Origin: Dendrobates tinctorius
Lineage: Eukaryota
DNA length: 64,000 nucleotides
NCBI RefSeq assembly: GCF_039654945.1
Contig: NW_027361688.1
Span: forward strand, 31,434,001-31,498,000
Direction: 5' to 3'
Shown here: one piece after another, positions 2,447 through 26,700 of the stretch
Numbering within the stretch: the first letter of the stretch is position 1
How the letters are laid out: every line of letters starts with the position of its first letter
Translations under genes and position numbers: made by a program
Notes under the pieces: generated by a model
Told to the model about the DNA's origin: nothing
Database searches by the model: none
Seen by the model: only the letters and a program-made list of their open reading frames with translations

Positions 2447-5400
2447 CATCCACCACTCATCTCGCCAAGGATTGTAAGGTCAGTGTAAAATGCACAGAAT
2501 GTGGAACCACAGATCATAACACTGCCCTACACCCTGGCCCAGCTCCATGGAGTGCACAAAATACGCCAGCTGACAGTGAGCATGGCGGGGAGGAAAAGAG
2601 CACCGATTCAGCTACGCCAGAGATCACTTCACAATGTACTGAAGTCTATAAAGGGACAATAGACAGTAGGTCTTGTTCAAAAATATGCCTCGTCAGTGTG
2701 TACCCAAAGGGCCATAGAGACAAAGCTGTGTGAGACTGTATGCTATCTTGGATGATCAAAGTAATCGATCACTGGCTAGATCAACATTCTTTGACCTATT
2801 CAACATTAAAGGACCAAACACTCCTTACTCATAAAAGACATGTGTAGGTACTGTGACAACAGCGGGCAGGAAAGCCACTGATTACCAAATTGAGTCCTTA
2901 GACGGACAATTCTGCCTGCCACTACCTACAATCATCGAGTGTAATCAGATCCCAGACAACAGGTCTGAAATCCCTACACCAGATGTGGCAATCCATCATG
3001 CTCACTTAAAACGTATAGCAAACCTCATACCGGAACTCGACCCTCAAGCACAGATAATACTGCTGTTGGGAAGAGACATCCTACAGGTTCATAAAGTGAG
3101 AAGTCATATCAATGGACTCAACAATGCTCCTTATGCACAATAGCTAGACCAAGGATGGGTCACAATATGAAACGTATGCTTGGGACACATGCACGCCCCA
3201 TCTTCTGTGACAAGCATGCTAACAAATACACTGGAGAAAGGGCACCCATCTCTGTTTCAACCTTGCAACAACGAGTTCCATGTCAAGGAACTACCACACA
3301 GCATCCAACTACCCAATCACTTAATAGACTTTACTCATGACAGCAGTATGGTGTCAGGAAGCTATGAGGATCAGCTGGGGTGCACAGTCTTCCAGAGAAC
3401 TAAGCAAGACAACCAAGTAGCAATGTCGGTAGAGGATAAGCTGTTCTTAGAGGTAATGGACAAAGGGCTCATAAAAGATGAGACCAACAGCTGGGTCGCA
3501 CCTCTTCAATTCAGAACCCACAGATCACGTCTACCAAACAGAGATCATGCATTCAAACGTTTCTCCTCTCTCAAACACAATCTGCAAAAGAAGCCAGAGA
3601 TGAGAGGTCACTTCTTCTCCTTCATGTCAAAGATATTTGAGAACTGCCATGCAGAACTAGCTCCCACTCTCAAAGACTCTGAAGAATGCTGGTTCCTACC
3701 CATGTTTCGAGTATACCACCCTAAGAAACCAGGCCAGATTAGAGTGGTGTTCGACTCCAGTGCTAAGTTTGATGATGTCTCCCTGAATGATGTTCTACTG
3801 ACAGGACCAGATCTCAATAACAAACTACTGGGAGTACTTATGCGCTTCCGTAAGGATTCCGTTGCCTTCATCGCTGACATCCAGCAAACGTTCCATTGTT
3901 TCCTTGTGAGAGAGAGAGAGACAGGAACATCCTAAGATTCTTCTGCTACAGAGACAATGATCCTACTAAAGAAGTCACAGAGTACCGCATGAGAGTGCAC
4001 ATCTTTGGCAATAGCCCTTCTCCTGCAGTCACCATCTATGGACTCAAAAGGTCAGCTCTAGAAGGAGAAACAGAATACGGGTCAGATGTCAAACAATTCA
4101 TAGAGAAAGACTTTTATGTTGATGAGTGTCTGAAAGCCATGCCTTCAAATGAAACTGCCATTAGTCTCCTCAGGAGAGCCCAAGAGATGCTTGCTTGGTC
4201 TAACCTCAGGCTTCACAAAATAGCTTCAAACAGCCAAGAACTCATGAAAGCATTCCCTTCACAAGACTTGTGTAACGGTCTCAGAGACCTGGGGTCAGAC
4301 CCCACACCAATGCAACGCAGCCTCGGGCTTCTCTGGAATCTACAGTCAGACAGTTTTATCTTTCAGGTCAGCCATGAAGAAAAGCCTTTCACACGCAGAG
4401 GTGTGTCTACCATCAACAGCCTATATGATCTCTTAGGTTTTGCAGCTCCTGTTACTATCCAAGGCAAAGCCATACAAAGAAACTTAACCAAGGAGTCTTC
4501 TGACTGGGATGCACCTCTACCACCTGATAAGATAACCCAGTGGGAAGCATGGAAGAACTCTTTAGCAGCTCTCTCCAACCTGAATGTGCCAAGGCCATAC
4601 ACCCCTGTGCCGTCTACAGAGATACAGAGCCAAAGACTATATGTATTTGCAGATGCTTCTGTCAAAGCAATTGCTGCTGTTGCTTATCTTAAAACTGTGG
4701 ACTCCAAATGTCAAAGCCACATTGGATTCGTCATGGGGAAAACAAAGCTTGCTCCACAACCAGAGCACACCATACCAAGGTTAGAACTTTGTGCTGCAGT
4801 CTTAGCCGTAGAGTTAGCAGAGTTCATCACATCCGAGATGGATATCGACCTGTCACAAGCCAAGTTCTACTCAGACAGCAAGGTAGTCCTGGGATACATC
4901 CACAATGAAACCAGGCGATCCTATGTTTGTCAACAACGAGTGCTACGAATTAGGAGATCAGTTCATCCAAAGCAGTGGCATTACGTTCCCACGGACCAAA
5001 ACCCTGCAGATCATGCAACTAGAGCAGTTGACGCAAGTCAACTAGAGAGCACAACATGGTTCTCAGGACCAAAACTATTGTACACTGAGGAGCGTTGTCC
5101 AGACACCTTTGAACTGATAGGAGAGGACTCAGATGCTGAAATCCGCACTCAGGTGTCCACACTTCATACAATGGCTTCAGATATTCAGCTTGGATCCCAC
5201 AGATTTGACAAATTTTCAAGTTGGAAGTTACTTACTTGAGCCATTACCTGCCTGACTCATATAGCTCACTCATTCAAGACCACCAGAGTTTGTGACACAG
5301 AAAAATGTAAAGGTTGGCATCTCTGTAAAAGCACCTATGTTACCTCCGACTTGGAATCTTCCAGAAAACACATCTCTACAGTTCAGAGAGAAACCTACTC

Positions 5401-14773: not shown

Positions 14774-15584
14774 TTGTTTGTGTGGAGATACAGCAAGGAC
14801 TAGCCACAGGTTCTGAACGACCTGAGACCATGTCCGAGGATATGATGCCACGCGTCTGACCAGAACTGGGCTACCACCTAGATACCTGCCGTTTCACCAA
14901 TAGAAATCACTTTGAACATTTGTAGTGTACAGATAAGACTCAGATCGACAGTTGTGTCTCGTTAGTAAATTTGTGATGTTGTCTCTAAATATGGACGCTT
15001 TAATTTTGCCCCATACTTTTCGAATGAACCTTTTATATATACACTTGTAATTCAAATTGTTCAGCCCCGTTTTGCAAATTAGACAAAAAAAATTCACTAA
15101 CGTCCGGCTGTTTGCAAGAAACTAAGCAAAGAAGAATTTATATGGCTCATCACAACTAACAAGTGGTTCTTCCAAATTCACCACACAATATCCCTTTCCC
15201 TTGTTACTGCAGTCTGTATTATTCAGTAGCATCTTCAGTACTTAGCAGAGCCCCTCTGGCTGTTGTAACCTGCTACTACTGTGATCCATATCCCAGCTTC
15301 TCGGAGCATTCCTGGAGAACTGTAGCACATTTCTCATGGGCAATGATATCCAGGTCACTAATATTCTTGGACTGTCAAGATAGCGGTCCCAAAAGTTAAA
15401 AGATCCTTACGGTTCCTAGAGATAGTTGGAAGCAGAATTCACAATTTCAAAGTTGCAGGAACACTCGTTACATCACCTGAAAATGGCAGAAAGAGGCAGT
15501 TGTTATCTGCGTCCATCAGATTCCTCAAAAGGCAGGTGGTCAAAAACCCACGAAAACATAGTATACATGCATATTAAATTAATA

Positions 15585-16226
15585 GTGTGCCCTCAAAGTC
15601 CAAAATAGCTAAAGTGCAAGTGGCAGTGTGCAAAAAGGAATAAAGGGTATTGCTATCAAAGGGTTACTGCCTAGGCTATTTAAATAAAGACTGTACCTAT
15701 AGTATAGGTGACTGCTGGGCTCATGCTGCTGCTGTTAAGACGTCCCTCCTGCCCGACGTACGTTTCGGAAATCCTTCTTCAGGGGGTCATACCTGGTGGG
15801 GGGACGCCTGACATTAAATACTACCGCTGCCCAATCATCATCTACTCTACCGGATCACATGCGTGCAGAGTAACCGGTAGGGGCGTGTATTTCATCCGAG
15901 TTGGCGCGCGCACAGCGTCATGTGCTTCCCCCGGTCACATGAGTCATGAAACTTCTGGTCGGTGGCCCGCAAGCCGGCCGTGCAGTCATGAAATTTGACG
16001 GCAGTGCGTGCCAGCAGGGTCTGAGTGCCGGAGGCGGTCAGAGTCAGGGGTGGTGCCCGGTGACGTGAGCGCACTGTGGATTGAAATTGTGTGGGATTTA
16101 TTGTAAGTGTAGTGGTTACACAAAACGGCACAAGATCATAAAACGGAATGTTAGGAATGGTTATATATTATAAAAGGATAAGAGATTGACTCCAAGGCGC
16201 AATTATGACACAGATATTGCCAAGGG
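15585..16226 (-). mobile_element. Penelope-like pseudo-LTR/3' UTR fragment, interrupted by a solo LTR and probably continuing at 17012-17420
   Basis: Carries a PLE-type minimal hammerhead on the minus strand. Boundaries are approximate. Confidence 0.5.
15752..15786 (-). ncRNA. Minimal hammerhead ribozyme (PLE type)
   Basis: Minus strand CCCC-CTGAAGA-A-GGA-tt-TCC-GAAA-CGTACG-TC-GGG: CUGANGA and GAAA cores, palindromic helix III, GUC triplet. Confidence 0.7.
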
Positions 16227-17011
16227 TGTTATGAATGAGTCACCGTAGGAGGCAAAAACAGAAATACTAGCTAAGTCCAGAAAACCAGAGAGGTTGGCAG
16301 CTATCGGATTGCAGACCCCTGAACCTATCAACAACAACTAGCAGTAGCCTTGGGGGGTTCCTACGGTGCCCTAGACCCCTCGATCACAGCCAGAGAACTA
16401 CAAAGCCTAAAGACAGAAAGGGAAATCTAAACTGCCCCAGAGCAGACCCCAAAGCAATAGGCAGCGCCCAACATATAATGACGGTGAAGCAAGATGAAAA
16501 TACTAACACAGATAGAAAGATAGGCTGAGCAAAGCCGGGGCCCAAGCTAACTAAATAGGACAGGATAGGAAAGCTGCTGTCTGCCATCTGCCAAAACCCT
16601 CTCAAAAACATGAGCCAACAGCTGATAGGGAAAAAAGCCCTGAAGACACTAGGCTTCAAAAAGACTATATCAGTACTCAGGTATTTTCTGAAGACAAAGT
16701 AAGGAATTCAGCTCACCCCAGCAGGGAATGGCAGAAATCCAGAAAAACAAAACCAAAACACAAATGCAAAAAGCAGAGCAGAAAACTTAGCTTTTGAGGA
16801 GCAGGAATCAGACTGGTCTCCTAGAATCCCTCAGAGAGATCACCAGCAAGGCAGAAGGGTGCGTCAGCTGCCTTATATCCAGTCAGCAATTCCCGTCACC
16901 CAGTCATTATCATCCTGCCCAGATGCTTGGTAATCAGCCTCACTACCTTCCTTCACCAGAAGAGGGAGTTCATCAGACCTCAATGGTGAAGTGGAAAATG
17001 AACTCACAACA
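16227..17011. mobile_element. Solo LTR (Gypsy-like)
   Basis: TGTTATGA … TCACAACA termini, near-duplicated flanks CAAGGG / CAAGGA, no internal region. Confidence 0.6.
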
Positions 17012-17443
17012 CAAGGAGATTTAAAAGTAAAAAATAAGTGATCTCCCGTATGGCAACAGTTAGATATTGCGCTTTCGCGAGTGACACTTCCAATGACCAA
17101 GATGGTGCTGCAATCGCCGAGGCGCAGTTGCACACACGCAAACTTTCACTTTGTTTCAAACAGTGTCTTCACTTTATGACATGCGCAGCCGATCTCTAGA
17201 GACGCCGATAGTAATGGGATATGCTTCTGACATGCGTAATTGATCCTTTGGGATGCTGGTATCAGCGCTATTAAAAATGGGGTGAGACATGTGGCATTCT
17301 GGTCGTGTACAGCTGATCACATTGCAATCAATTAAGATGCCTATGAACTGTCTGTATAGCACTGCACTGTATGCACTTTTGAATTTTACTGTATAATGTT
17401 ATGAATACCTTTTTGCGCTTTATGTATAAACGCTGGCTTCAGA

Positions 17444-17628
17444 TTCCACCAATCACAGTGCAGCCCCGCCCAGATTTTACACCAATCAGAAAGCAGATCC
17501 ACCTTGGAGAATCCAGTAGAACTGTACGAGTCATGGCCTCTGTGAGCTCATAACAGTGATGAGGTTCCACCAATCACAGTGCAGCCCCGCCCAGATATAC
17601 CGCCAGAGAGCCGCACTGGGCATAAATA
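17444..17628 (+). promoter_or_regulatory. Histone-like Pol II promoter: duplicated 32-bp CCAAT+GC-box module, extra CCAAT, TATA-like CATAAATA
   Basis: TTCCACCAATCACAGTGCAGCCCCGCCCAGAT at 17444-17475 and 17565-17596; CCAAT at 17482; CATAAATA at 17621, ~70 nt upstream of the ATG. Confidence 0.75.
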
Positions 17629-17693
17629 GCCGCCGCCTGCTCTGCTTACCCTTGGTTATTGTCTTATGCAGTAGCTATTTGTTTCTTGTGAAC

Positions 17694-18071
17694 ATGTCAG
17701 ATAGAGAAAGTCGCAGAGAGATGAGAAGGAGCCGGTCAGCCATGGCTGGCCTGATTTTTCCAGTTGGCCGCATACACCGGTTTCTGAGAAGACGTAATAA
17801 TGGCCGACCTGTCCGTGCTGATGCTGCAGTGTTCCTGGCTGCCGTGCTGGAAGATGTAGCTTGGCAGATCGTGGGCTTTGCTGGGTTAAGAGCCCAGGCA
17901 AGTGGCCGCATTATACTCCGTCATATACTGCTTGGTATACGTGGTCATGATGAGTTGGACGGACGGCTAAGAAATATCATCATCGCAGAAGCGGGCTTCA
18001 TGACAAGATACCCGTTGTTCGATCCCGCCCTTCTCGTCAATGTTGAAGTTATGCCTCCTCCAGATCCGTGA
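17694..18071 (+). CDS. Divergent, lysine-free, arginine-rich histone H2A variant (125 aa, intronless)
   Basis: H2A signatures RS..AGLIFPVGRIHRFLR, VFLAAVLE, RII.RH, IR..DEL, I.IAE.G. Uninterrupted ORF from AACATGTCA (the track's 17556 start lies upstream of the TATA-like box). Confidence 0.85.
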   Translation: MSDRESRREMRRSRSAMAGLIFPVGRIHRFLRRRNNGRPVRADAAVFLAAVLEDVAWQIVGFAGLRAQASGRIILRHILLGIRGHDELDGRLRNIIIAEAGFMTRYPLFDPALLVNVEVMPPPDP

Positions 18072-19093
18072 TTAGGGGGAAACATAGGAGCGCTCCATGG
18101 TGAGGTCGCAGTGAGGAGCACATTCCATCCCGGTTTCTTACCCGGTTTCTTACCTAGACTGCTGCTCCACTCGTTCAAGCCAACAGAACGAAGAAATCCG
18201 ATCCATTTTTGAATGTGATGCTGTGTTAATAATAATGAAATTTGTGTGCTGATTGGCTCATGACACAGAGGTGTAGAATATTCTTTAATCCCTTCCCACC
18301 CTGCTCCATATACATCAGTATCAGACTAGTGGTGCTCCGACACTCAGCACCCCAACTAATTAGCCGTTTGCGGTGCCGACATAGGTGGGATGTAAACAGT
18401 GTGTGGGAGTCGGACATGTCACACTGTGTAGTGTCTGCCGCCGGGTACTGCAGATCAGCTCCTATTACATGAGTAGTGGCTGATCTCCAGTATCTGGCAG
18501 CAGCTACTACACATCTGACGGAACGGTGATGTGCTCTGTCACTCTATTAACATCCGGATGCTACAAACAGCTAAGCGGTGGCTGTGCAAAGTGTCCAACC
18601 ACCACCCTAGCCCCATCAACGCTTCTGCAACCCAATTTGTTTTTTTAGCAGGGGACAAACAAGGTTTCCTGCCATCATCTACTATTAGGCCGAGCCATGC
18701 CAGAGCCAGTAGATAAGAGACCACATTGGTGTAGTCTCGATTTGGAGTTAATAGTAGACATGAGAGAATCAATTCACATGACCTCGGCCCAACAGTCAGG
18801 TCAGTATTCTGTGGCCGCTGGATGGCAGCCCTGTGAATAGTCTCTTGCCCGATTGCATCCATAGCTCTTCTACTGATCACCCGGGCTGGAACCACGTCAT
18901 CATATCGGCGTGATGTACAAACAACATTGTGCCAGCCCGGCTAATGAAAAGGGGAGCAGCAGATGCTGGGGGGGGGGGGGGGGTGAGAGGCAGGGCTCCC
19001 GTCCAGCGGTTACAGAATATGGACCGGTTGCAGGCTGAGGTCCTGAGCATCAATTCACCGATTTCTGTAATGAATCTTTATAGCGTGCTTATA

Positions 19094-19308
19094 CAGTGCC
19101 TTGTAAATAAATTCATACCCCACAAAATTAAATGTATTTTGTTGGGATTCTATGTGATATACCAACACACAGTAGTCAGTATTTGTGAAGTGTAAAGGAA
19201 ATGATACATGAGATTTCTAATTATTTTAAAAATATAAATCTGAAAATCTGAAGAAAAAAAAAAAATTTGGAATAGTTCACAGGGTACAAATACTTTTTCA
19301 GAGCACTG
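19094..19308. mobile_element. Short non-autonomous Tc1-type element
   Basis: TA|CAGTGCCTTG … GAGCACTG|TA termini. Confidence 0.7.
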
Positions 19309-20398
19309 TACTAAATCTGGCGCTGCTAAGAAGTTGTTAACAATTTAGTGCTGAAATCTCTAGAAGGTACAAAGTGGTCTACCGGTTCCCGGGGTTAGTG
19401 CCGCCCCATATGGAGGGAGCTCAGGAGCTGCTCTCGCGCCATACAGCACGGGTGCCAGCTGTGTTATACAGCTGCCAACCAAGTCTATTCAAAGTCAGTC
19501 AGTCATGACACCAGGTAGAAACTGGCGTAGGAGTCGCTTACGGCTTCTAGCACCTCCCCAACCACATGATCGCCCGATGACATCTAAGACTTACCGAAGA
19601 CACCCTCGTTCCCTGGCTTCATGGGAGATCAGTAATTTTATAATACTCTGCAATATTACAGTATTACATTGTATTATAAAAGTGATCTTTGGAGTGATTA
19701 AAAAAAATAGGAAAAAAGTGAAACCTATCTATAAAATAAATAGATAAAAGAATATAGAAAATTTATTTCAACCCATTTTCTTGGAACCAAGCCTATAAAA
19801 AAAAAAAGTGCAAAACATCAACATATTTGGTATCACAGCATTACTGTCCGAACTAATAAAATAATAGTTTATCTCGTTGGGTAAAGGCAGAAATGGAAAG
19901 AAGTTACATCACAGGATCTCTTTTTTTTTTTAAGCAGTTTGTCTCCAAAAAAACGGAATAAAAGATAGAACTTTATGATCTATTGATCTATGTACCCCGA
20001 AACGGTAAAAAAATGAGAGCACGTACTGCAAAAAACAAGCACTGAAGAAACACTAAAGCAACCGAAAAATGAAAAAAAGGAGGAAAAATTGAAAGCGACG
20101 AGGGGCCCAGTGGACTCTGTTGACCAAGTGCCCGCATGGCCTTGGAGTCCGCCCTGCCGGTTGTACAAGGACCATTATTTCGGCATGACAGCGGTGGTCC
20201 GAGACCCCGGACTCAGTCGCTCTGATCTTCTCGCTCAGAAAAGCATCTCTAGAAATACCGTAAGAGCACAGATATAGTGAGGTTAATGACTGGTGTTCTT
20301 CAGTTTCGGATTAGTGACCGTGTAATAAGATGGATGACAGGGGTAGTAGTGTGGGTGATACACTAGGTCAGTCATGGACTCCAGGGACAAGAACTGGG

Positions 20399-20404
20399 TT
20401 TATT
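20399..20404 (-). terminator. Candidate polyadenylation signal of ccdc69
   Basis: AATAAA on the minus strand ~135 nt after the stop codon. Confidence 0.5.
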
Positions 20405-20538
20405 GGGTTTTATAATTAAAAGTAATAAATAAAATGTCGCCTCTGATCCCGTCCGGGAGAGATGACCCTCGGATCGATAGTTCCGTATAAAACGATGCTT
20501 GAACAATTATTAGTCCGTTCTTTCCGCTGCTCTTCGGT

Positions 20539-20713
20539 CTAAGTCACCAAAACAGCCACGTCCTGTGAGGATAAAGACAAGGAGAATGGCCGGGATCCAT
20601 CTCCGCTGACCGTCCGGTACACGTGCTGCTCCTTATCGTGCTGAAGTCGCTCCCGGAGCTGTACTTCCTTCTCTAGGGCAGCTTTGGTGCTTAACAGCTC
20701 CTCTGTCATACAC
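20539..20713 (-). CDS. ccdc69: ccdc69 exon 9, coding part ([29 protein letters not shown]…VAVLVT*)
   Basis: Acceptor TTGCAG|G, phase 2; TAG stop at 20541-20539. Confidence 0.92.
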
Positions 20714-23700
20714 CTGCAACACAATGGAGATGGCGGGATTAATTCCATTATATCAGGGAGTCTGAGAATCCGGCGCACAATTCAATAGAAAGTGGAATTT
20801 TATGAGATCAGTAGCAGAAGACTGTGGGAAATCACAGCGGCAAACCACGCCATTACTGTGTGCCCTATGGTCAGGGGCGGATCGGCTGCTGTGTTACTTC
20901 TCCGGCTTTTCCTAGAGCTGCCACTAGAGGGAGCACACTGCTTACAGATGTCAAAGCACGCTTCATACTCCTTTATACGCAGTGGGTGCCAGCTGTGAAG
21001 CCCCGTCACTGGCACGGCCTAAAAGGAGATTGCTCAAGGGACAATAGTGTATTGTACCAGCGATCAAGTGATGGCAGGTTCAAGACCCCTAAAGGAGACT
21101 AACAAAGTGGTAAATTGTATACAAAAAAAAAAAATATGTTAAAATATCCTTAAACAAGCTAAAAAAATGTATATTATTCTTGCGCCTGTAAAAGTTTAGA
21201 CTTTTAAAATATCACATGAAAACCATAAACAATAAAATTACAAGACCTGCCTCACAAAAAGCAATCAAAAAGCTCTATGGATATCAAAATGGTACGAGTA
21301 AAAAGTACAGCTCAACCCCTGAAAAAACACACAGCTTTACTAATGAAAAAAATGACATGGGTCTTCAAATATGTTGGTACAAACAAAAAAATTGTAAAAC
21401 TATAACTTCGGTATTAGTTTAATCATAGGAAAGTGTTGCAAAAAAAAAAAAAAAAATCATCTTCCTGGACTGATCTTACATTTTCAAAATTCTCAATTCA
21501 CAGGTAAAATCCGAGTTCAGCGAGTGCAGATCTTCCCACTACTGAGATAGGAGATGACAGTTGGTGCTCATAAAGTTCTATGGAGAAGTGCAAATTGCAG
21601 CAGAATGTCTAGCTCCTCCCTCTCCACAGAATCTTATATGCACCAACTGTCATATCCTATCTCAGTAATGGGAATATCTGCTGTCACTGATCCACATTTT
21701 GAAAGCTCAATCCAGGAGAGGAAAGAAGAAGATTCCTGTGATCAGATATATTACAAAGTAGCTTACTTTCATATCGATTAATAACTTACGAAATAAATAT
21801 TAGTTACACTTTAATGTGTCATTTTTAGCACCAAAAAAAATCAAAACAAAATATGAAAAATACAGAGGTTTTTCTGTAACCGCACCCCACAAATATTTTT
21901 TTTTTCGCATCAATTTTATGTTAAATTAAAAAAAAAAATACAAAATAGGCCTTCATTGGGCTATGCAGATTAAAAAAAACATAAAAATGTGAGAAGAGGA
22001 TGAAAAAACTAATAAAAAAAAAAGGAGGTTATGGCAGCACAGGGTAAGTGACTATGTACATGCTACACAAATATTTTTAGGGTGCTAAAATATCTCAAAT
22101 TAAAAAGAAAAAGGAATTTTGCAACACGACCTGATTAAAAATTTTTGATCATTTTTCACGCATCTCCTATGAAAACCTAATGCATCCCTATGGTAAAAGA
22201 CAAGAAACATTCCTAGTGTAGCCTGATCCTGCAGTTTCTTGAAGCAGTAACTGACATGTTGCTATTTACCATTTGTTTGCTGTCAGTTACCATGGAAATG
22301 CATAAATCTGCACTCAGCTGTGGATGCAAAACGATAGGATTTGTTTTTTAAAGTCGTATTTTATTTTTTTTAAAAGGGAACCTGTCACATAAACAAAAAT
22401 ACACTATTAACCTGCAAATATGGGGTTAATCTTACAGGTTAGTAATGTCCTGATCCCGCTCAGGGCCACACAGAGAGCCCCACTGCCAGGGGGAAATGAG
22501 CTTTATTTCTCCCAGCAGCCTCGGCTTTTATTCCTAGGGGTGCGGCTGTGAGTCAGCGGTGGGGCATGGTTACAGCTGCTGCTCACTACATATAGAGTGG
22601 TGACTGACGCTGCACTGGCCACACCTCTATAACTGAAAGCTCCCGGCAGTGGGGCTTTCAGTGCATGCGCCGGGCATTTTCAGAACATTATTAACCTGCA
22701 GATTAATGTTTTAGTTTTAATGATTAGTGTTTTTTTTGTTGTTTTTTTTACATGACAGGTTTCCTTTAATAAATAAGTGGGAAAAAATAATAAGAAAAAA
22801 AGTTTGAGAATTTTCCACATCATAGCTCGGTTACTACAACGTTGTTGGTGCACTGAAGCAGGACAAGGACATTTCAAGTTTATCACGTGCTGACAAATTG
22901 GAGAAGTTTGTTTTTTGTCGCTTTGAATATGCAAAATTCCTGGATAAGAATCTAACAATACTGAGCGGTAATAATAATACAGAATCGGATGGCGGCTCAC
23001 ACTGCGATGGTGGAGTGCTTCTGCGTCCGTTCCTGCAGAGCTTCGTTCTCCTGCTGGAGCATCTTCTTCTTCTCCTCCAGTGCGAGGATCCTCTCCATCT
23101 GCCGACAACACGCAGAATCAGTAACATTGCCCGGAGCCACAAGAGATGGTCTCCAAAGTCCCATTTAGGTAGGATTCTCTCTTCCTGGACCTTTGGGACT
23201 GCTAGGACCCCCCACTGATCTCCAGAATGGGGAAACAACCAAGCACTGTACGTGCAAGCTTAACCACTGCTCCATCCTAACGCTTAATATCCGCAATCTT
23301 GTGGAACTGATGTGTACGGGTAGTTGCTGAGGGTACTAGTGAGGAAACCCAAATCCATCTATCATTTATAACCATAATTGCTACCGTCCCTTTAAATCGT
23401 AGGTCACCAGATTTAACAACTTAAACTGCATACATTATTAAACAAATCTTAGTCCTTACGTACTTGCTATGAAAATAGGCTGGTGTACTTACTATGAAAC
23501 TGTATGTCAGAATATTTGTTTAATTCTTTGTGAAAGTTTAAAGAGAACCTGACATCCGATCCAAGGACAGCATGTATCAGGCACCGGCTGTATGATTACA
23601 GCCATGTATGTTTCACTCTATAGCGCTGCGGTGTTTCAGAGAATAACGTACCAAATACAATTGAGAAAAAAAAAAAAAGTTTTAAAGGGGATCTGTCCTT

Positions 23701-26700
23701 CCTCGGGATGTATATGACCTATTAATATGGGCATACAGGTAACAGAAATGTTACACTAGTCCTACCTGTCTGCCTCATATGAATGGTCTTGTTGCTGAGA
23801 AATGTTATATTCTGTCTTCATGCTAATGATTTCTTCCAGGCTCCGGGGGGGTGCGGTGCCTGGAAGAAGTTTTTGGACAAATTTCTGAATTTTTTTTTAT
23901 CACTTAAAAAAAAACAAACAAACAAAAAAAAAAAACACTATACTGTATGGTAAAATCAATGGTGTCATTCAAAAGTACAACTCGTCTAGCAAAAAAAAAA
24001 AACGCTATAAGAGAGGTACAGAAGCACTATGATGTAACTCACCATGCCCTGCTGGTTCAGGAGCTTCTTGTCTTTCTCCTTGATCAGGTTATTCTTCATC
24101 TCGATGACAAAGTACAAGCTGTGCAGCTCCTGTTCCCAGAACTCTCCGGGGCTCCCATAATCCTTAGTAAATACCATAAAGGTGATATCATGAGAAAACA
24201 AAGAAGCAGCATTGGCCTCAATGACCGGAGTACGTGTATGTGGCTCAGAAATAGCACCGCGTTCTGGAAGCTTAAAGACAAGACGACTCTTGTAGAACTC
24301 CTGCATGAAATCGCTTGGACTTACTGATATCAGTGTCAGTCGGTCTGAACTTTTCCGGCACAGAAAAGGAACTTCATCCCCAGCGAATGACCAGTGAAGT
24401 GCTTTGAGGGGGATGGCCAGCCAGCTCAGTGCTTCGAGGGGGATGGCTAGCGAGCTCAGTGCTTCGAGGGAGCCGGCCAGCCAGCTCAGTGCTTCGAGGG
24501 GGCTGGCCATCCAACTCAGTGCTTCGAGGGGGCTGGCCATCCAACTCAGTGCTTCGAGGGGGCTGGCCATCCAACTCAGTGCTTCGAGGGGGATGGCCAG
24601 CCAGCTCAGTGCTTCGAGGGGGCCGGCCAGCCAGCTCAGTGCTTCGAGGGGGATGGCCAGCCAGCTCAGTGCTTCGAGGGGGCCGGCCAGCCAGCTCAGT
24701 ACTTCGAGGGGGATGGCCAGCCAGCTCAGTGCTTCGAGGGGGCCGGCCAGCCAGCTCAGTGCTTCGAGGGGGCCGGCCAGCCAGCTCAGTGCTTCGAGGG
24801 GGCCGGCCAGCCAGCTCAGTGCTTCGAGGGGGATGGCCAGCCAGCTCAGTGCTTCGAGGGGGCCGGCCAGCCAGCTCAGTGCTTCGAGGGGGCCGGCCAG
24901 CCAGCCCAGTGCTTCAAGGGGTTCCGGCCATCCAGCTCAGTGCTTCGAGGGGGGGAGGGGAATGGCCATCCAGCTCAGTGCTTCGAGGGGGATGGCCATC
25001 CAGCTCAGTGCTTCGAGGGGGATGGCCATCGAGCTCAGTGCTTCGAGGGGGATGGCCATCGAGCTCAGTGCTTCGAGGGGGATGGCCATCCAGCTCAGTG
25101 CTTCGACACAGCCAGCCTATAGAACTATGCCAGACAGCCAGCCTCCTTCAAGCAAGCCACTGGTCATGTGCAGACACTGAGAAGTGAGGAAAGTTACCCA
25201 TCTCTGTTACTTATCTTACATTGATTTGCTGGCCTGTCGCAATGTCAGATGTAGCCACGCCGCAACAATGACGTCGAGTCATATGGATTTCATAGAAAAA
25301 TATTCAGGATTGAGAGTCCTCAGTAGTTGATACCTTTTAATGGCTAACTGAAAAGATGGTAATACATTGCAAGCTTTCGAGACTACTCAGGTCTCTTCAT
25401 CAGGCTAGACTAATACAAAATCTGAAGTCACATATTTATGCACAATACAGCCTAGAAAAAATGCAATAGATAAGACAAGTGACGTGAAGCAGAACTATCA
25501 ATATGGGAGAGGGAGAAACATAAATATAAACATTGGACCAGTTCATAGATAAGGAGTCTGGATGTTTTATGGTCCTCTGATTGGGGTCTAGTTCTGTGTT
25601 GCCCCGCAAGGTTTTAAAAGGAAATTCCTTAATTGATGTAAAAAGACATAAATCCATGCGACACATTCATTCCAGCACTGAGAGTGTCAAAGTTCGTCAT
25701 AAATTTGTACTCCCAAACTCGTCTCTCTCTCTGAGATGTGAAGTTACCTTTCAATACCAGTAATTTCATATCCATGCTGCTGTGATCAGGGATACAGAAA
25801 TGTTTTGCCACAGGTAGATCCATTCTTTTTTCTCTTATAGTGTGACGATGAGCATTCATCCTTGTTCTAAGCTTTTGCCCTGTCTCCCCCACATACAGAC
25901 CCCCAGTTGGACATTTAGTACAAATAATTAAGTACACCCCATTAGATGTGATGCAGGTGAAAGTACCTGGGATCTTGTAGTCCTGATGTGAGTTGGGGAT
26001 CTTTATCTTGTCCGTGGTCATTATAAATGGACAGGTTTTACATTTTTTCTGGTTGCAAGGAAAGGTTCCTGCAGCTGTTGGAGAGGACAGGGAGCTTCTG
26101 ACAATGATGCTTCTTAAATTTGGGGGCTGCCTAAAACACAGTAGTGGGGGGTCTGGAAAAATGGATTTTAATCGGGCATCTTTTTGTAGTAAAGGTTGTA
26201 ATTTCCGTGCAGCTCCCCTTAGCACCTCCAGATTTGGGTTGTAGGTGACTACTAGAGGCACTCGGTTATTTTCTTCTTTAGCTTTGTAATGTAGCAGGTG
26301 ATTCCTTGACAATCTGGTGGCTCTTGTAATTTGGTTTTCAATTGTTCTTGGATGGTAACCCTGATTCAAAAAGGTCTTTTTGAGGCGACCAAGGTGTTTG
26401 TCTCTTTCCATGGGGTTGGAACATATACGATTGTATCTGATGGCTTGGCTATAGATAATAGAGTTCTTTATGTGTTTTGGATGGAAACTGTCCCATTTAA
26501 GGTATGTTGGACTGTCGATGTATCCTTCACCAGTGGTTTAAGAATACCCTCTACCCATCCAGATACCTGCTCAGTGAGGGTGCCCACACATGAAATAATT
26601 GGTCTTCCTGGATTTCCAGATTTGTGGATTTTGGGAAGCATGTAGAATGTCCCTATTCTTGGAGTCTCTGGTATCAGGTCATCGCCAGCTCTTATGGACT

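What the first reader, a model, noticed from the sequence alone, without database searches (positions are those of the whole stretch)
17694..18071. Lysine-free, arginine-rich histone H2A variant with an eroded acidic patch: a possible amphibian analogue of mammalian germline H2A variants
Seen in the sequence: an intact 125-aa intronless ORF with an H2A fold, 0 Lys and 20 Arg. By-eye alignment to canonical H2A shows: acidic-patch changes E61Q, E64G and D90H (E56 and E92 kept, E91D); a 2-residue deletion in loop 2; the SGRGK tail replaced by SDRESRREMRR; and an unrelated Pro/hydrophobic C-tail lacking K118/K119, so no lysine acetylation or Polycomb ubiquitylation is possible. Established: Lys-poor, Arg-rich sequence with a weakened acidic patch characterises the eutherian testis variants H2A.B/L/P, which destabilise nucleosomes. 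Unlike those, this protein is not C-terminally truncated. Inference: a convergently evolved, probably germline/sperm H2A variant in a frog, located alone outside a histone cluster. Losing every Lys without gaining a stop or frameshift fits selection better than decay.
Basis: partly seen in the sequence, partly recalled or inferred. Interest (0 to 1): 0.85.

Follow-up and report, generated by a model that had tools for sequence, protein, structure and literature searches.

The report
Lysine-free divergent frog histone H2A gene
This is a real, intact, single-copy gene for a very divergent histone H2A with no lysine at all; it is the most extreme member of an apparently undescribed, fast-evolving H2A family found in several frogs, and whether it still works as a histone is open.

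Summary
Window 17694-18071 (+) is an intact 125-codon ORF with 0 Lys and 20 Arg. It matches solved H2A structures at E 6e-20.

It is not an isolated oddity. It belongs to a supported clade (96/86) of divergent, Lys-poor, Arg-rich H2A-like genes in Rhinoderma darwinii, Phyllobates terribilis and Bufo bufo. I found no paper describing this clade.

- **Shared features:** the core promoter and 5'UTR are 84-88% identical to the Rhinoderma copies, against 42-46% protein identity. A two-codon uORF is also shared.
- **Differences:** the window copy is solitary and lacks the histone 3' stem-loop that all ten Rhinoderma copies carry.
- **Expression:** a related species' RNA run holds a bounded 603-nt contig over the gene. 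Two RNA runs of the window's own species show nothing.

Selection evidence is mixed. An open frame, only net in-frame indels and zero lysine are each unlikely under neutral drift. However, its amino-acid changes look almost unconstrained, unlike those of its relatives (z 3-7).

Best reading (0.5): a live but highly derived variant gene. Main rival (0.33): a decaying orphon. A germline role is untested.

The parts
17441..17605 (+). Upstream promoter region with three CCAAT-box modules. Two of them belong to a 44-nt CCAAT + GC-box unit duplicated 121 nt apart.
   Evidence: the repeat finder families D1 and D2. CCAAT modules also lie upstream of the Rhinoderma copies.
17603..17693 (+). Conserved core promoter and 5'UTR. 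It includes a TATA box (ATAAATA at 17622-17628) and a predicted start site near 17648.
   Evidence: 84-88% identical to three Rhinoderma copies over 91 nt, against 54% identity at synonymous sites (binomial p 3e-9). The start-site position is inferred from TATA spacing and was not measured.
17666..17674 (+). Two-codon upstream ORF (ATG CAG TAG) in the 5'UTR, out of frame with the main ATG.
   Evidence: Present in the window and in all three L001 Rhinoderma copies. Any role in translation control is inferred.
17694..18071 (+). Coding sequence of the 125-aa lysine-free H2A-like protein, stop codon included.
   Evidence: Predicted helices at residues 14-17, 24-34, 42-67, 75-84 and 86-91; tail 99-125 has low confidence.
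18072..18225 (+). Presumed 3'UTR, up to the end of the RNA contig seen in a related species. It has no histone stem-loop and no AATAAA or ATTAAA. Only the weak variant AAGAAA is present, at 18191. A 12/13-nt tandem duplication lies at about 18130-18155.
   Evidence: Rfam at E<=10 finds no Histone3 match. Hexamer scan. Contig X6 record 28 spans 17613-18225.

Best explanation
The ORF is a genuine, single-copy, intronless gene of a lineage-restricted frog H2A-variant family. The other known members are in Rhinoderma, Phyllobates and Bufo.

The family derives from a replication-type H2A gene with CCAAT/TATA promoter and, in Rhinoderma, a 3' stem-loop. It has lost acidic-patch residues E64 and E91 and the L2 lysines K74/K75. 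It is Lys-poor and Arg-rich and carries a new hydrophobic, proline-containing C-tail.

In the window's lineage the gene went further:
- all remaining lysines were replaced (three to Arg, one to Ile, one deleted);
- E61 and D90 were lost;
- the minor-groove Arg42 and Pro80 were lost;
- the stem-loop is absent and the gene sits alone among repeats.

Inferred mechanism, not shown: the protein still pairs with H2B through its histone fold. The resulting nucleosome surface would have a weak acidic patch, so poorer docking of the H4 tail and of arginine-anchor factors and a more open or less stable particle. It would offer no lysine for ubiquitin, acetyl or SUMO marks. Expression is probably restricted by tissue or stage; germline or early embryo is a guess by analogy.

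Selection appears to act on the open frame, the promoter and 5'UTR, and lysine avoidance rather than on individual histone-fold residues.
For: - **H2A homology:** E 6e-20; histone-fold helices in the model.
- **Family clade:** support 96/86, with the window protein inside it. The profile search shows a clear score gap: 190-250 bits for the four frog clusters against <=152 for all other H2As.
- **Shared features:** MSDRES start and shared derived residues. The 91-nt core promoter/5'UTR is 84-88% identical to Rhinoderma, against pS 0.46 in the CDS.
- **Open frame:** P 0.09 to 0.004 under neutral drift at 0.2-0.7 substitutions per site, before indels.
- **Indels:** all indels against Rhinoderma are net multiples of three. 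Local non-coding DNA between the two sister species carries about as many gap letters as mismatches.
- **Lysine loss:** P(K=0) is 0.001-0.009, and the simulated Lys count stays near 5. The Arg count of 20 exceeds the drift expectation of 14 (P 0.025). Lysine loss runs against composition drift, since GC3 fell to 0.46.
- **Transcription:** a bounded 603-nt contig at depth 8.9 covers 17613-18225 in a related species' RNA run. Unique flanks have zero depth, and the neighbouring gene's terminal exon is present.
Against: - Against H2A profiles, the window protein scores no better than stop-free neutral simulants (z 1.8, P 0.036 with all H2As; z -0.15, P 0.58 with the family only). Rhinoderma, Bufo and Phyllobates proteins score far above theirs (z 3.0-7.3).
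- BLOSUM and hydropathy tests are weak (P 0.03-0.19).
- Pairwise dN/dS to Rhinoderma is 0.58, which implies roughly 0.8 on the window's own branch. That split is my rough partition using tree branch lengths.
- 33 of 66 near-invariant H2A positions are changed, including R42P and P80L.
- There is no stem-loop and no canonical poly(A) signal.
- Two RNA runs of the window's own species show zero depth on the gene, although the neighbouring exon is covered.
- The protein is not on record in the protein collection, and Pfam Histone is below threshold.
- The relative's RNA contig starts 8 nt upstream of the TATA box, which does not fit the predicted start site. Its strand is unknown.
Confidence: 0.5

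Rival explanations
1. Decaying orphon. A solitary copy escaped from a tandem array of the family and lost its 3' stem-loop. It has drifted with little or no protein-level constraint, and the open frame and transcript are leftovers of a recently dead or dying gene.
For: - The amino-acid replacement pattern is near neutral, while relatives are clearly constrained.
- The terminal branch is the longest in the clade, 2.85.
- Half of the near-invariant H2A positions are changed.
- There is no stem-loop or canonical poly(A) signal.
- The location is solitary and repeat-flanked.
- There are no reads in two RNA runs of its own species.
- No gene call exists in the collection.
Against: - About 0.27-0.35 substitutions per site of neutral drift would be needed to give the observed change. 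That leaves an open frame only about 2-9% of the time from stops alone.
- It would also bring several frameshifting indels, given the local indel load. None is seen as a net effect.
- Zero lysine is not expected from drift.
- The promoter and 5'UTR are far better conserved than synonymous sites.
- The orthologous locus persists and yields an RNA contig in a sister species.
Confidence: 0.33
2. Neofunctionalised, non-nucleosomal protein. The frame and composition are kept, but the product no longer serves as a nucleosome subunit. It might act as a soluble H2B or chaperone binder, a nucleic-acid binder, or a cationic peptide precursor in the manner of toad buforin, which is cut from the H2A N-terminus.
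For: - The frame, lysine avoidance and Arg count look selected, while histone-fold positions do not.
- The segment corresponding to buforin II (RAGL.FPVGRIHRFLR) is the best-kept part of the protein.
- H2A-derived peptides are documented in anurans (papers listed, such as PMC6121439; I did not read them in depth).
Against: - I saw no signal peptide when reading the sequence; none was searched for with a tool.
- Net charge fell to +7, which is poor for a cationic peptide or DNA condenser.
- No expression or processing data exist.
- The relatives' alpha3/alphaC region is conserved as expected for nucleosomal H2A.
Confidence: 0.1

Closest known systems
Auto-annotated 'histone H2A-like' / 'H2A-IV-like' / 'H2A-beta, sperm-like' proteins of Rhinoderma darwinii (XP_075715406-446 series), Phyllobates terribilis (XP_073536538, XP_073536552) and Bufo bufo
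   Same: - One clade with the window protein (96/86).
- Shared MSDRES-type start, loss of E64, E91 and K74/K75, F for Y50, and a derived hydrophobic/Pro C-tail.
- Lys-poor and Arg-rich.
- Core promoter/5'UTR 84-88% identical to Rhinoderma, with the same 2-codon uORF.
   Different: - The window protein is only 42-46% identical to them, while they are 52-63% identical between species.
- It has 0 Lys against 4-8.
- It has extra losses (E61, D90, R42, P80) and a 2-residue deletion.
- It lacks the stem-loop present in 10 of 10 Rhinoderma copies.
- It is single-copy, not in a tandem array.
- Its substitutions look unconstrained.
Eutherian short H2A variants (H2A.B, H2A.L, H2A.P, H2A.Q) and marsupial/monotreme H2A.R (Molaro et al. 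2018, PMC5880237)
   Same: - Loss of N-terminal lysines, a weakened acidic patch, rapid evolution and copy-number turnover.
- Like H2A.R, it keeps a long C-terminus with acidic-patch mutations.
- The nearest Atlas cluster by features (0.92, tied with two H2A clusters) is named after H2A.P (lead only).
   Different: - It is not C-terminally truncated.
- Its origin looks independent, from a frog replication-type H2A gene with a CCAAT/TATA promoter and, in relatives, a stem-loop.
- No testis expression has been shown.
- No short H2A sequence was included in my tree, so independent origin rests on the shared frog promoter and family clade, not on a direct test.
Canonical replication-dependent H2A
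   Same: Intronless gene, CCAAT/TATA promoter, H2A fold, and the AGL.FPVGR and RIHR motifs.
   Different: No 3' stem-loop, not in a histone cluster, about 42-46% identity, no lysine, eroded acidic patch, different tails.

Membership tests
Histone H2A (fold and class) | Significant sequence match to H2A across alphaN-alpha1-alpha2-alpha3-alphaC, with the AGLxFPV motif | tested here: met
   phmmer against PDB gives E 5.9e-20 over residues 8-104. AGLIFPV is present. The AF2 model has the expected helices at pLDDT about 70-80.
Histone H2A (fold and class) | Pfam PF00125 at gathering score, and PF16211 Histone_H2A_C | tested here: not met
   PF00125 scores 19.1 bits against a cut-off of 26.4. There is no PF16211 hit.
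Frog divergent H2A-variant clade (unnamed) | Falls in one clade with the Rhinoderma, Phyllobates and Bufo proteins, apart from other H2As | tested here: met
   Clade support is 96/86 and it appears in 96% of bootstrap trees. The long-branch caveat applies, but the shared promoter/5'UTR supports the grouping independently.
Frog divergent H2A-variant clade (unnamed) | Shared derived residues (G44, G46, L58, E64, L65, K74/K75, N89 and E91 changed) and the derived C-tail | tested here: met
   One search lists the shared deviations. Tail alignment is; similarity is weak and the end point matches Phyllobates.
Frog divergent H2A-variant clade (unnamed) | Histone 3' stem-loop after the stop codon | tested here: not met
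   Rfam Histone3 scores 37.8-38.7 bits in 10 of 10 Rhinoderma copies. The window has none, even at E<=10. Bufo and Phyllobates DNA could not be fetched.
Mammalian short H2A (H2A.B/L/P/Q) | Truncated C-terminal docking domain and short length | tested here: not met
   The protein is 125 aa with a 20-25-residue tail beyond the fold.
Mammalian short H2A (H2A.B/L/P/Q) | Weakened acidic patch and loss of N-terminal lysines | tested here: met
   E61Q, E64G, D90H and E91D; 0 Lys. Defining features taken from PMC5880237.
Mammalian short H2A (H2A.B/L/P/Q) | Common descent with the eutherian X-linked genes, and testis-specific expression | not tested
   No short H2A sequence was in the tree. The frog-specific promoter and clade argue for an independent origin. 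Tissue of expression is unknown.
Histone pseudogene / orphon | Disabling lesion (stop, frameshift or lost start) | tested here: not met
   The frame is open, the ATG has A at -3 (conserved in the Rhinoderma copies), and indels are net in-frame.
Histone pseudogene / orphon | Neutral substitution pattern and no transcription | tested here: inconclusive
   Replacements are near neutral, with pairwise dN/dS of 0.58. An RNA contig exists in a relative, but there are none in two runs of its own species.

The most novel reading that the evidence does not exclude
Frogs independently evolved their own class of specialised H2A variants. These are H2A-only tandem arrays with stem-loops in some species and a solitary, completely lysine-free gene in this one. 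The class would parallel the mammalian germline short H2As. The window gene would then be a working histone that cannot be ubiquitylated or acetylated on lysine and has a nearly erased acidic patch, used in germ cells or early embryos.
Probability: 0.25. Interest if true: 0.8.

Novelty: new variant of a known kind. Interest (0 to 1): 0.58.

Why it matters
Fast-evolving, germline-type H2A variants with a weak acidic patch are so far described in mammals (PMC5880237). A second, independent family in frogs would allow a test of which features recur: lysine loss, acidic-patch erosion and copy-number turnover. Frogs also offer accessible eggs, sperm and egg extracts for chromatin work.

A natural core histone with no lysine would be a ready-made probe for what H2A ubiquitylation and acetylation are needed for.

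The window gene combines a maintained frame, promoter and lysine avoidance with almost free amino-acid change. That makes it a useful case of selection on composition rather than on sequence, or else a caught-in-the-act gene death.

Tried and rejected
- **Close homologues:** the word-index search found no closer relative than the 45%-identical Rhinoderma protein, and the exhaustive HMMER search listed only hits at 36-51% identity. The family emerged only when I read the low-lysine hits and ran a profile search.
- **Exact look-up:** the window protein is not on record in the collection.
- **Relatives' DNA:** That ruled out a branch-specific dN/dS, a stem-loop check and a synteny check in those species.
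- **Sister-species ORF:** the orthologue's ORF could not be read. Read laying printed only the best-supported differences, none inside the gene, and its cap is one call.
- **Synteny with Rhinoderma:** blastn of the window against L001 and L002 matches only the gene itself, 17603-18009.
- **Neighbour identity (ccdc69):** Pfam and the Atlas gave only generic coiled-coil hits.
- **Composition bias:** GC-biased mutation as the cause of Lys-to-Arg change is rejected. GC3 is lower than in Rhinoderma and the substitutions are symmetric.
- **Transposon capture:** no flanking terminal repeats were found, and the gene is single-depth in the relative's DNA.
- **Protamine-like reading:** rejected, because net charge is only +7.
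- **Literature:** six searches found no described frog Arg-rich or Lys-free H2A.
- **Structure:** the AF2 monomer model has mean pLDDT 63.7. It confirms the helices but does not discriminate between the hypotheses.

Full report
**1. The observation**

Window 17694-18071 on the plus strand is an uninterrupted 125-codon ORF ending in TGA. It encodes 0 Lys, 20 Arg and 13 Asp+Glu. It matches H2A chains of solved nucleosomes at E 5.9e-20 over residues 8-104, at about 45% identity. It is too divergent for Pfam's Histone threshold, scoring 19.1 against 26.4 bits, and has no H2A C-terminal domain hit.

I compared it with 37 ordinary H2As, using the 66 columns that are at least 90% conserved among them. 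Further losses are R42P (the L1 minor-groove arginine), P80L, Y57D, Q104E and G105A, and there is a 2-residue gap at the alpha2/L2 junction.

An AlphaFold model built on a 46-sequence alignment gives the expected helices at pLDDT about 70-80 and an unstructured tail. This adds nothing decisive.

No second H2A-like sequence lies in the window, and no histone 3' stem-loop lies anywhere in the 64 kb.

**2. It belongs to a family**

The word-index search and the exhaustive HMMER search found nothing closer than 45-50% identity. Two of the low-lysine hits share idiosyncratic features with the window protein:
- a Rhinoderma darwinii 'histone H2A-like' protein that also starts MSDRES;
- a Phyllobates terribilis protein that ends in ...EDP, like the window's ...PDP.

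A profile of these sequences separates four frog clusters from every other H2A. The four are two from Rhinoderma, one from Phyllobates and one from Bufo bufo. They score 190-250 bits; all other H2As score 152 or less.

In a maximum-likelihood tree of 64 H2As the six frog sequences form one clade with support 96/86. The window protein is sister to the rest, on the longest terminal branch at 2.85.

The family as a whole is derived:
- 4-8 Lys and 15-19 Arg, against about 12 and 12 in a canonical H2A;
- E64, E91, K74 and K75 lost in all members;
- a new hydrophobic, Pro-containing C-tail.

In Rhinoderma the genes form H2A-only tandem arrays on two chromosomes, with periods of about 3.4 kb and 2.1 kb. 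One 90%-identity cluster alone has 28 distinct members. Every one of the ten copies I could read carries a bona fide histone 3' stem-loop at 37.8-38.7 bits. NCBI lists these proteins only under automatic names. Six literature searches found no description of them.

**3. Gene anatomy in the window**

Upstream lie three CCAAT modules. Two belong to a 44-nt CCAAT + GC-box unit duplicated 121 nt apart. A TATA box sits at 17622-17628.

The 91 nt from 17603 to the ATG are 84-88% identical to the Rhinoderma copies. Synonymous sites of the CDS differ at 46% (binomial p 3e-9) and the proteins are 42-46% identical. This stretch contains a two-codon uORF (ATG CAG TAG, 17666-17674) that is present in all copies compared.

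DNA similarity to Rhinoderma runs from 17603 to 18009. A nucleotide alignment suggests the tails are still related through small indels that sum to multiples of three.

Downstream there is no stem-loop, even at E<=10, and no AATAAA or ATTAAA within 730 nt. The only candidate is the weak variant AAGAAA at 18191.

**4. Transcription**

I laid contigs of four runs on 15500-20500.

An RNA run of a related species (X6, organism B) holds a 603-nt contig at depth 8.9 covering 17613-18225. It has 25 mismatches and 19 gap letters. The unique flanks have zero depth, and the terminal exon of the neighbouring minus-strand gene is covered at depth 20.5. This pattern fits RNA rather than contaminating DNA.

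A DNA run of the same species (X5) covers the whole region contiguously at single-copy depth. The locus therefore predates the split of the two species. From the mismatch counts, I compute about 4% mismatch in the gene and 5-7% in the flanks.

Two RNA runs of the window's own species (X17, X19) show no depth on the gene, although the neighbouring exon is present. Tissues are unknown, and contigs carry no strand.

The contig begins 8 nt upstream of the TATA box. That does not fit the start site predicted near 17648, and I cannot explain it.

**5. Is it under selection?**

*For selection:*
- **Open frame.** Starting from a family-like sequence, neutral drift leaves the frame open in 9%, 4%, 2.4% and 0.4% of simulations at 0.2, 0.3, 0.355 and 0.7 substitutions per site. 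Indels are not counted in these figures.
- **Indels.** The local non-coding DNA of the two sister species carries about as many gap letters as mismatches, so several frameshifts would be expected under drift. All gaps against Rhinoderma are net multiples of three.
- **Lysine.** The simulated Lys count stays near 5, and K=0 occurs in 0.1-0.9% of runs. Of the five Rhinoderma Lys sites, three are AGA Arg, one is Ile and one is deleted in the window.
- **Arginine.** The Arg count of 20 exceeds the drift expectation of 14 (P 0.025).
- **No composition bias.** The change is not a GC-bias effect. GC3 is 0.46 against 0.58 in Rhinoderma, and the substitutions are symmetric.

*Against selection:*
- **dN/dS.** The pairwise value to Rhinoderma is 0.58, while the two Rhinoderma arrays give about 0.3 between them. 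Splitting dN by tree branch lengths gives roughly 0.8 for the window's branch. This is my approximation.
- **Profile-score test.** I inferred a family ancestor and simulated stop-free neutral drift to the same number of replacements. I then scored the results against H2A profiles built without the test species.

| Test protein | Replacements | z (all-H2A / family-only profile) | P |
|---|---|---|---|
| Rhinoderma | 22 | 3.0 / 4.3 | <0.001 |
| Bufo | 25 | 4.6 / 7.3 | <0.001 |
| Phyllobates | 35 | 4.1 / 5.7 | <0.001 |
| Window | 44 | 1.8 / -0.15 | 0.036 / 0.58 |

The Bufo and Phyllobates values are inflated because each stays in the other's profile. The Rhinoderma and window tests are fair.

- **Chemical conservatism.** This is also weak (P 0.03-0.19).

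Caveat on ascertainment: the finding was picked because it has no lysine, so the lysine P-values overstate the surprise.

**6. Reading**

What has been maintained is the reading frame, the promoter and 5'UTR, positive charge carried by Arg, and the avoidance of Lys. Individual histone-fold residues have not been maintained.

I favour, at about 0.5, a live but highly derived variant gene. It could be evolving under changed or diversifying selection, as mammalian short H2As do (PMC5880237). By fold it should still pair with H2B and would give a nucleosome face with a weak acidic patch and no lysine marks. All of that mechanism is inference.

The main rival, at about 0.33, is a solitary orphon that lost its stem-loop and is dying. 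It explains the neutral-looking replacements and the silence in its own species' two RNA runs. It does not explain the open frame, the in-frame indels, the lysine purge or the conserved 5' region, unless death was very recent.

A non-nucleosomal new function, at about 0.1, would also fit selection on composition without selection on fold.

The protein is less basic than canonical H2A (net +7 against about +16), so a protamine-like role is unlikely. A germline role rests only on analogy and on the Atlas feature search. In that search, one of three clusters tied at 0.92 carries the H2A.P name.

**7. Comparison with known kinds**

It is an H2A by fold and descent. It is a member of the frog clade by tree, residues and promoter, but lacks that clade's stem-loop and array organisation.

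It resembles short H2As in acidic-patch erosion and lysine loss. It fails their defining C-terminal truncation and most likely arose independently. In keeping a long C-terminus it is conceptually nearer to marsupial/monotreme H2A.R.

I rate it a new variant of a known kind.

Another note of this scan reports an 'orphan H2A beside HMCES' elsewhere in this genome. I did not examine it, and it may or may not be related.

Noticed in passing
window 17666-17674: A two-codon upstream ORF (ATG CAG TAG) in the 5'UTR, out of frame with the main ATG. It is conserved in the window and in all three Rhinoderma L001 copies, and may be a translation-control element.
   Followed up: partly
L001:3215-10452 and L002:2416-14673 (Rhinoderma darwinii): Two tandem arrays made only of the divergent H2A gene, with periods of about 3.4 kb and 2.1 kb, on two chromosomes. 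Each copy has a histone 3' stem-loop, and the spacers are rich in TG microsatellite. dN/dS between the arrays is about 0.3. One 90%-identity cluster holds 28 distinct proteins.
   Followed up: partly
window 18423-18515: A near-perfect hairpin that is high-copy in the related species' DNA (depth 217 against about 10). It gives only far-sub-threshold hits to miRNA models and looks like a MITE-type repeat.
   Followed up: no
window 18130-18155: A 12/13-nt tandem duplication (CCGGTTTCTTAC) in the presumed 3'UTR. The related species' RNA contig is 13 nt shorter than the window over the gene region, which could reflect this duplication. This was not verified.
   Followed up: no
window 20059-21449, with exons near 20539-20778 and 22997-23164 (minus strand): A neighbouring gene with coiled-coil exons, convergent with the H2A-like gene. 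Its terminal exon is covered in all three RNA runs.
   Followed up: partly
window 3896-5239: An ORF with a Pao/BEL retrotransposon peptidase domain (E 3e-43). The gene's surroundings are repeat-rich, with very high contig depth at 16168-17002 and 19007-19340 in the relative's DNA.
   Followed up: no
window 23986-25187: A minisatellite that reads as long repetitive ORFs on both strands (units such as ASQLSASRG). It is probably a non-coding tandem repeat.
   Followed up: no
window 17613: The related species' RNA contig begins 8 nt upstream of the conserved TATA box, about 35 nt before the predicted start site. This is unexplained. It could be an upstream start, or contig end noise.
   Followed up: no
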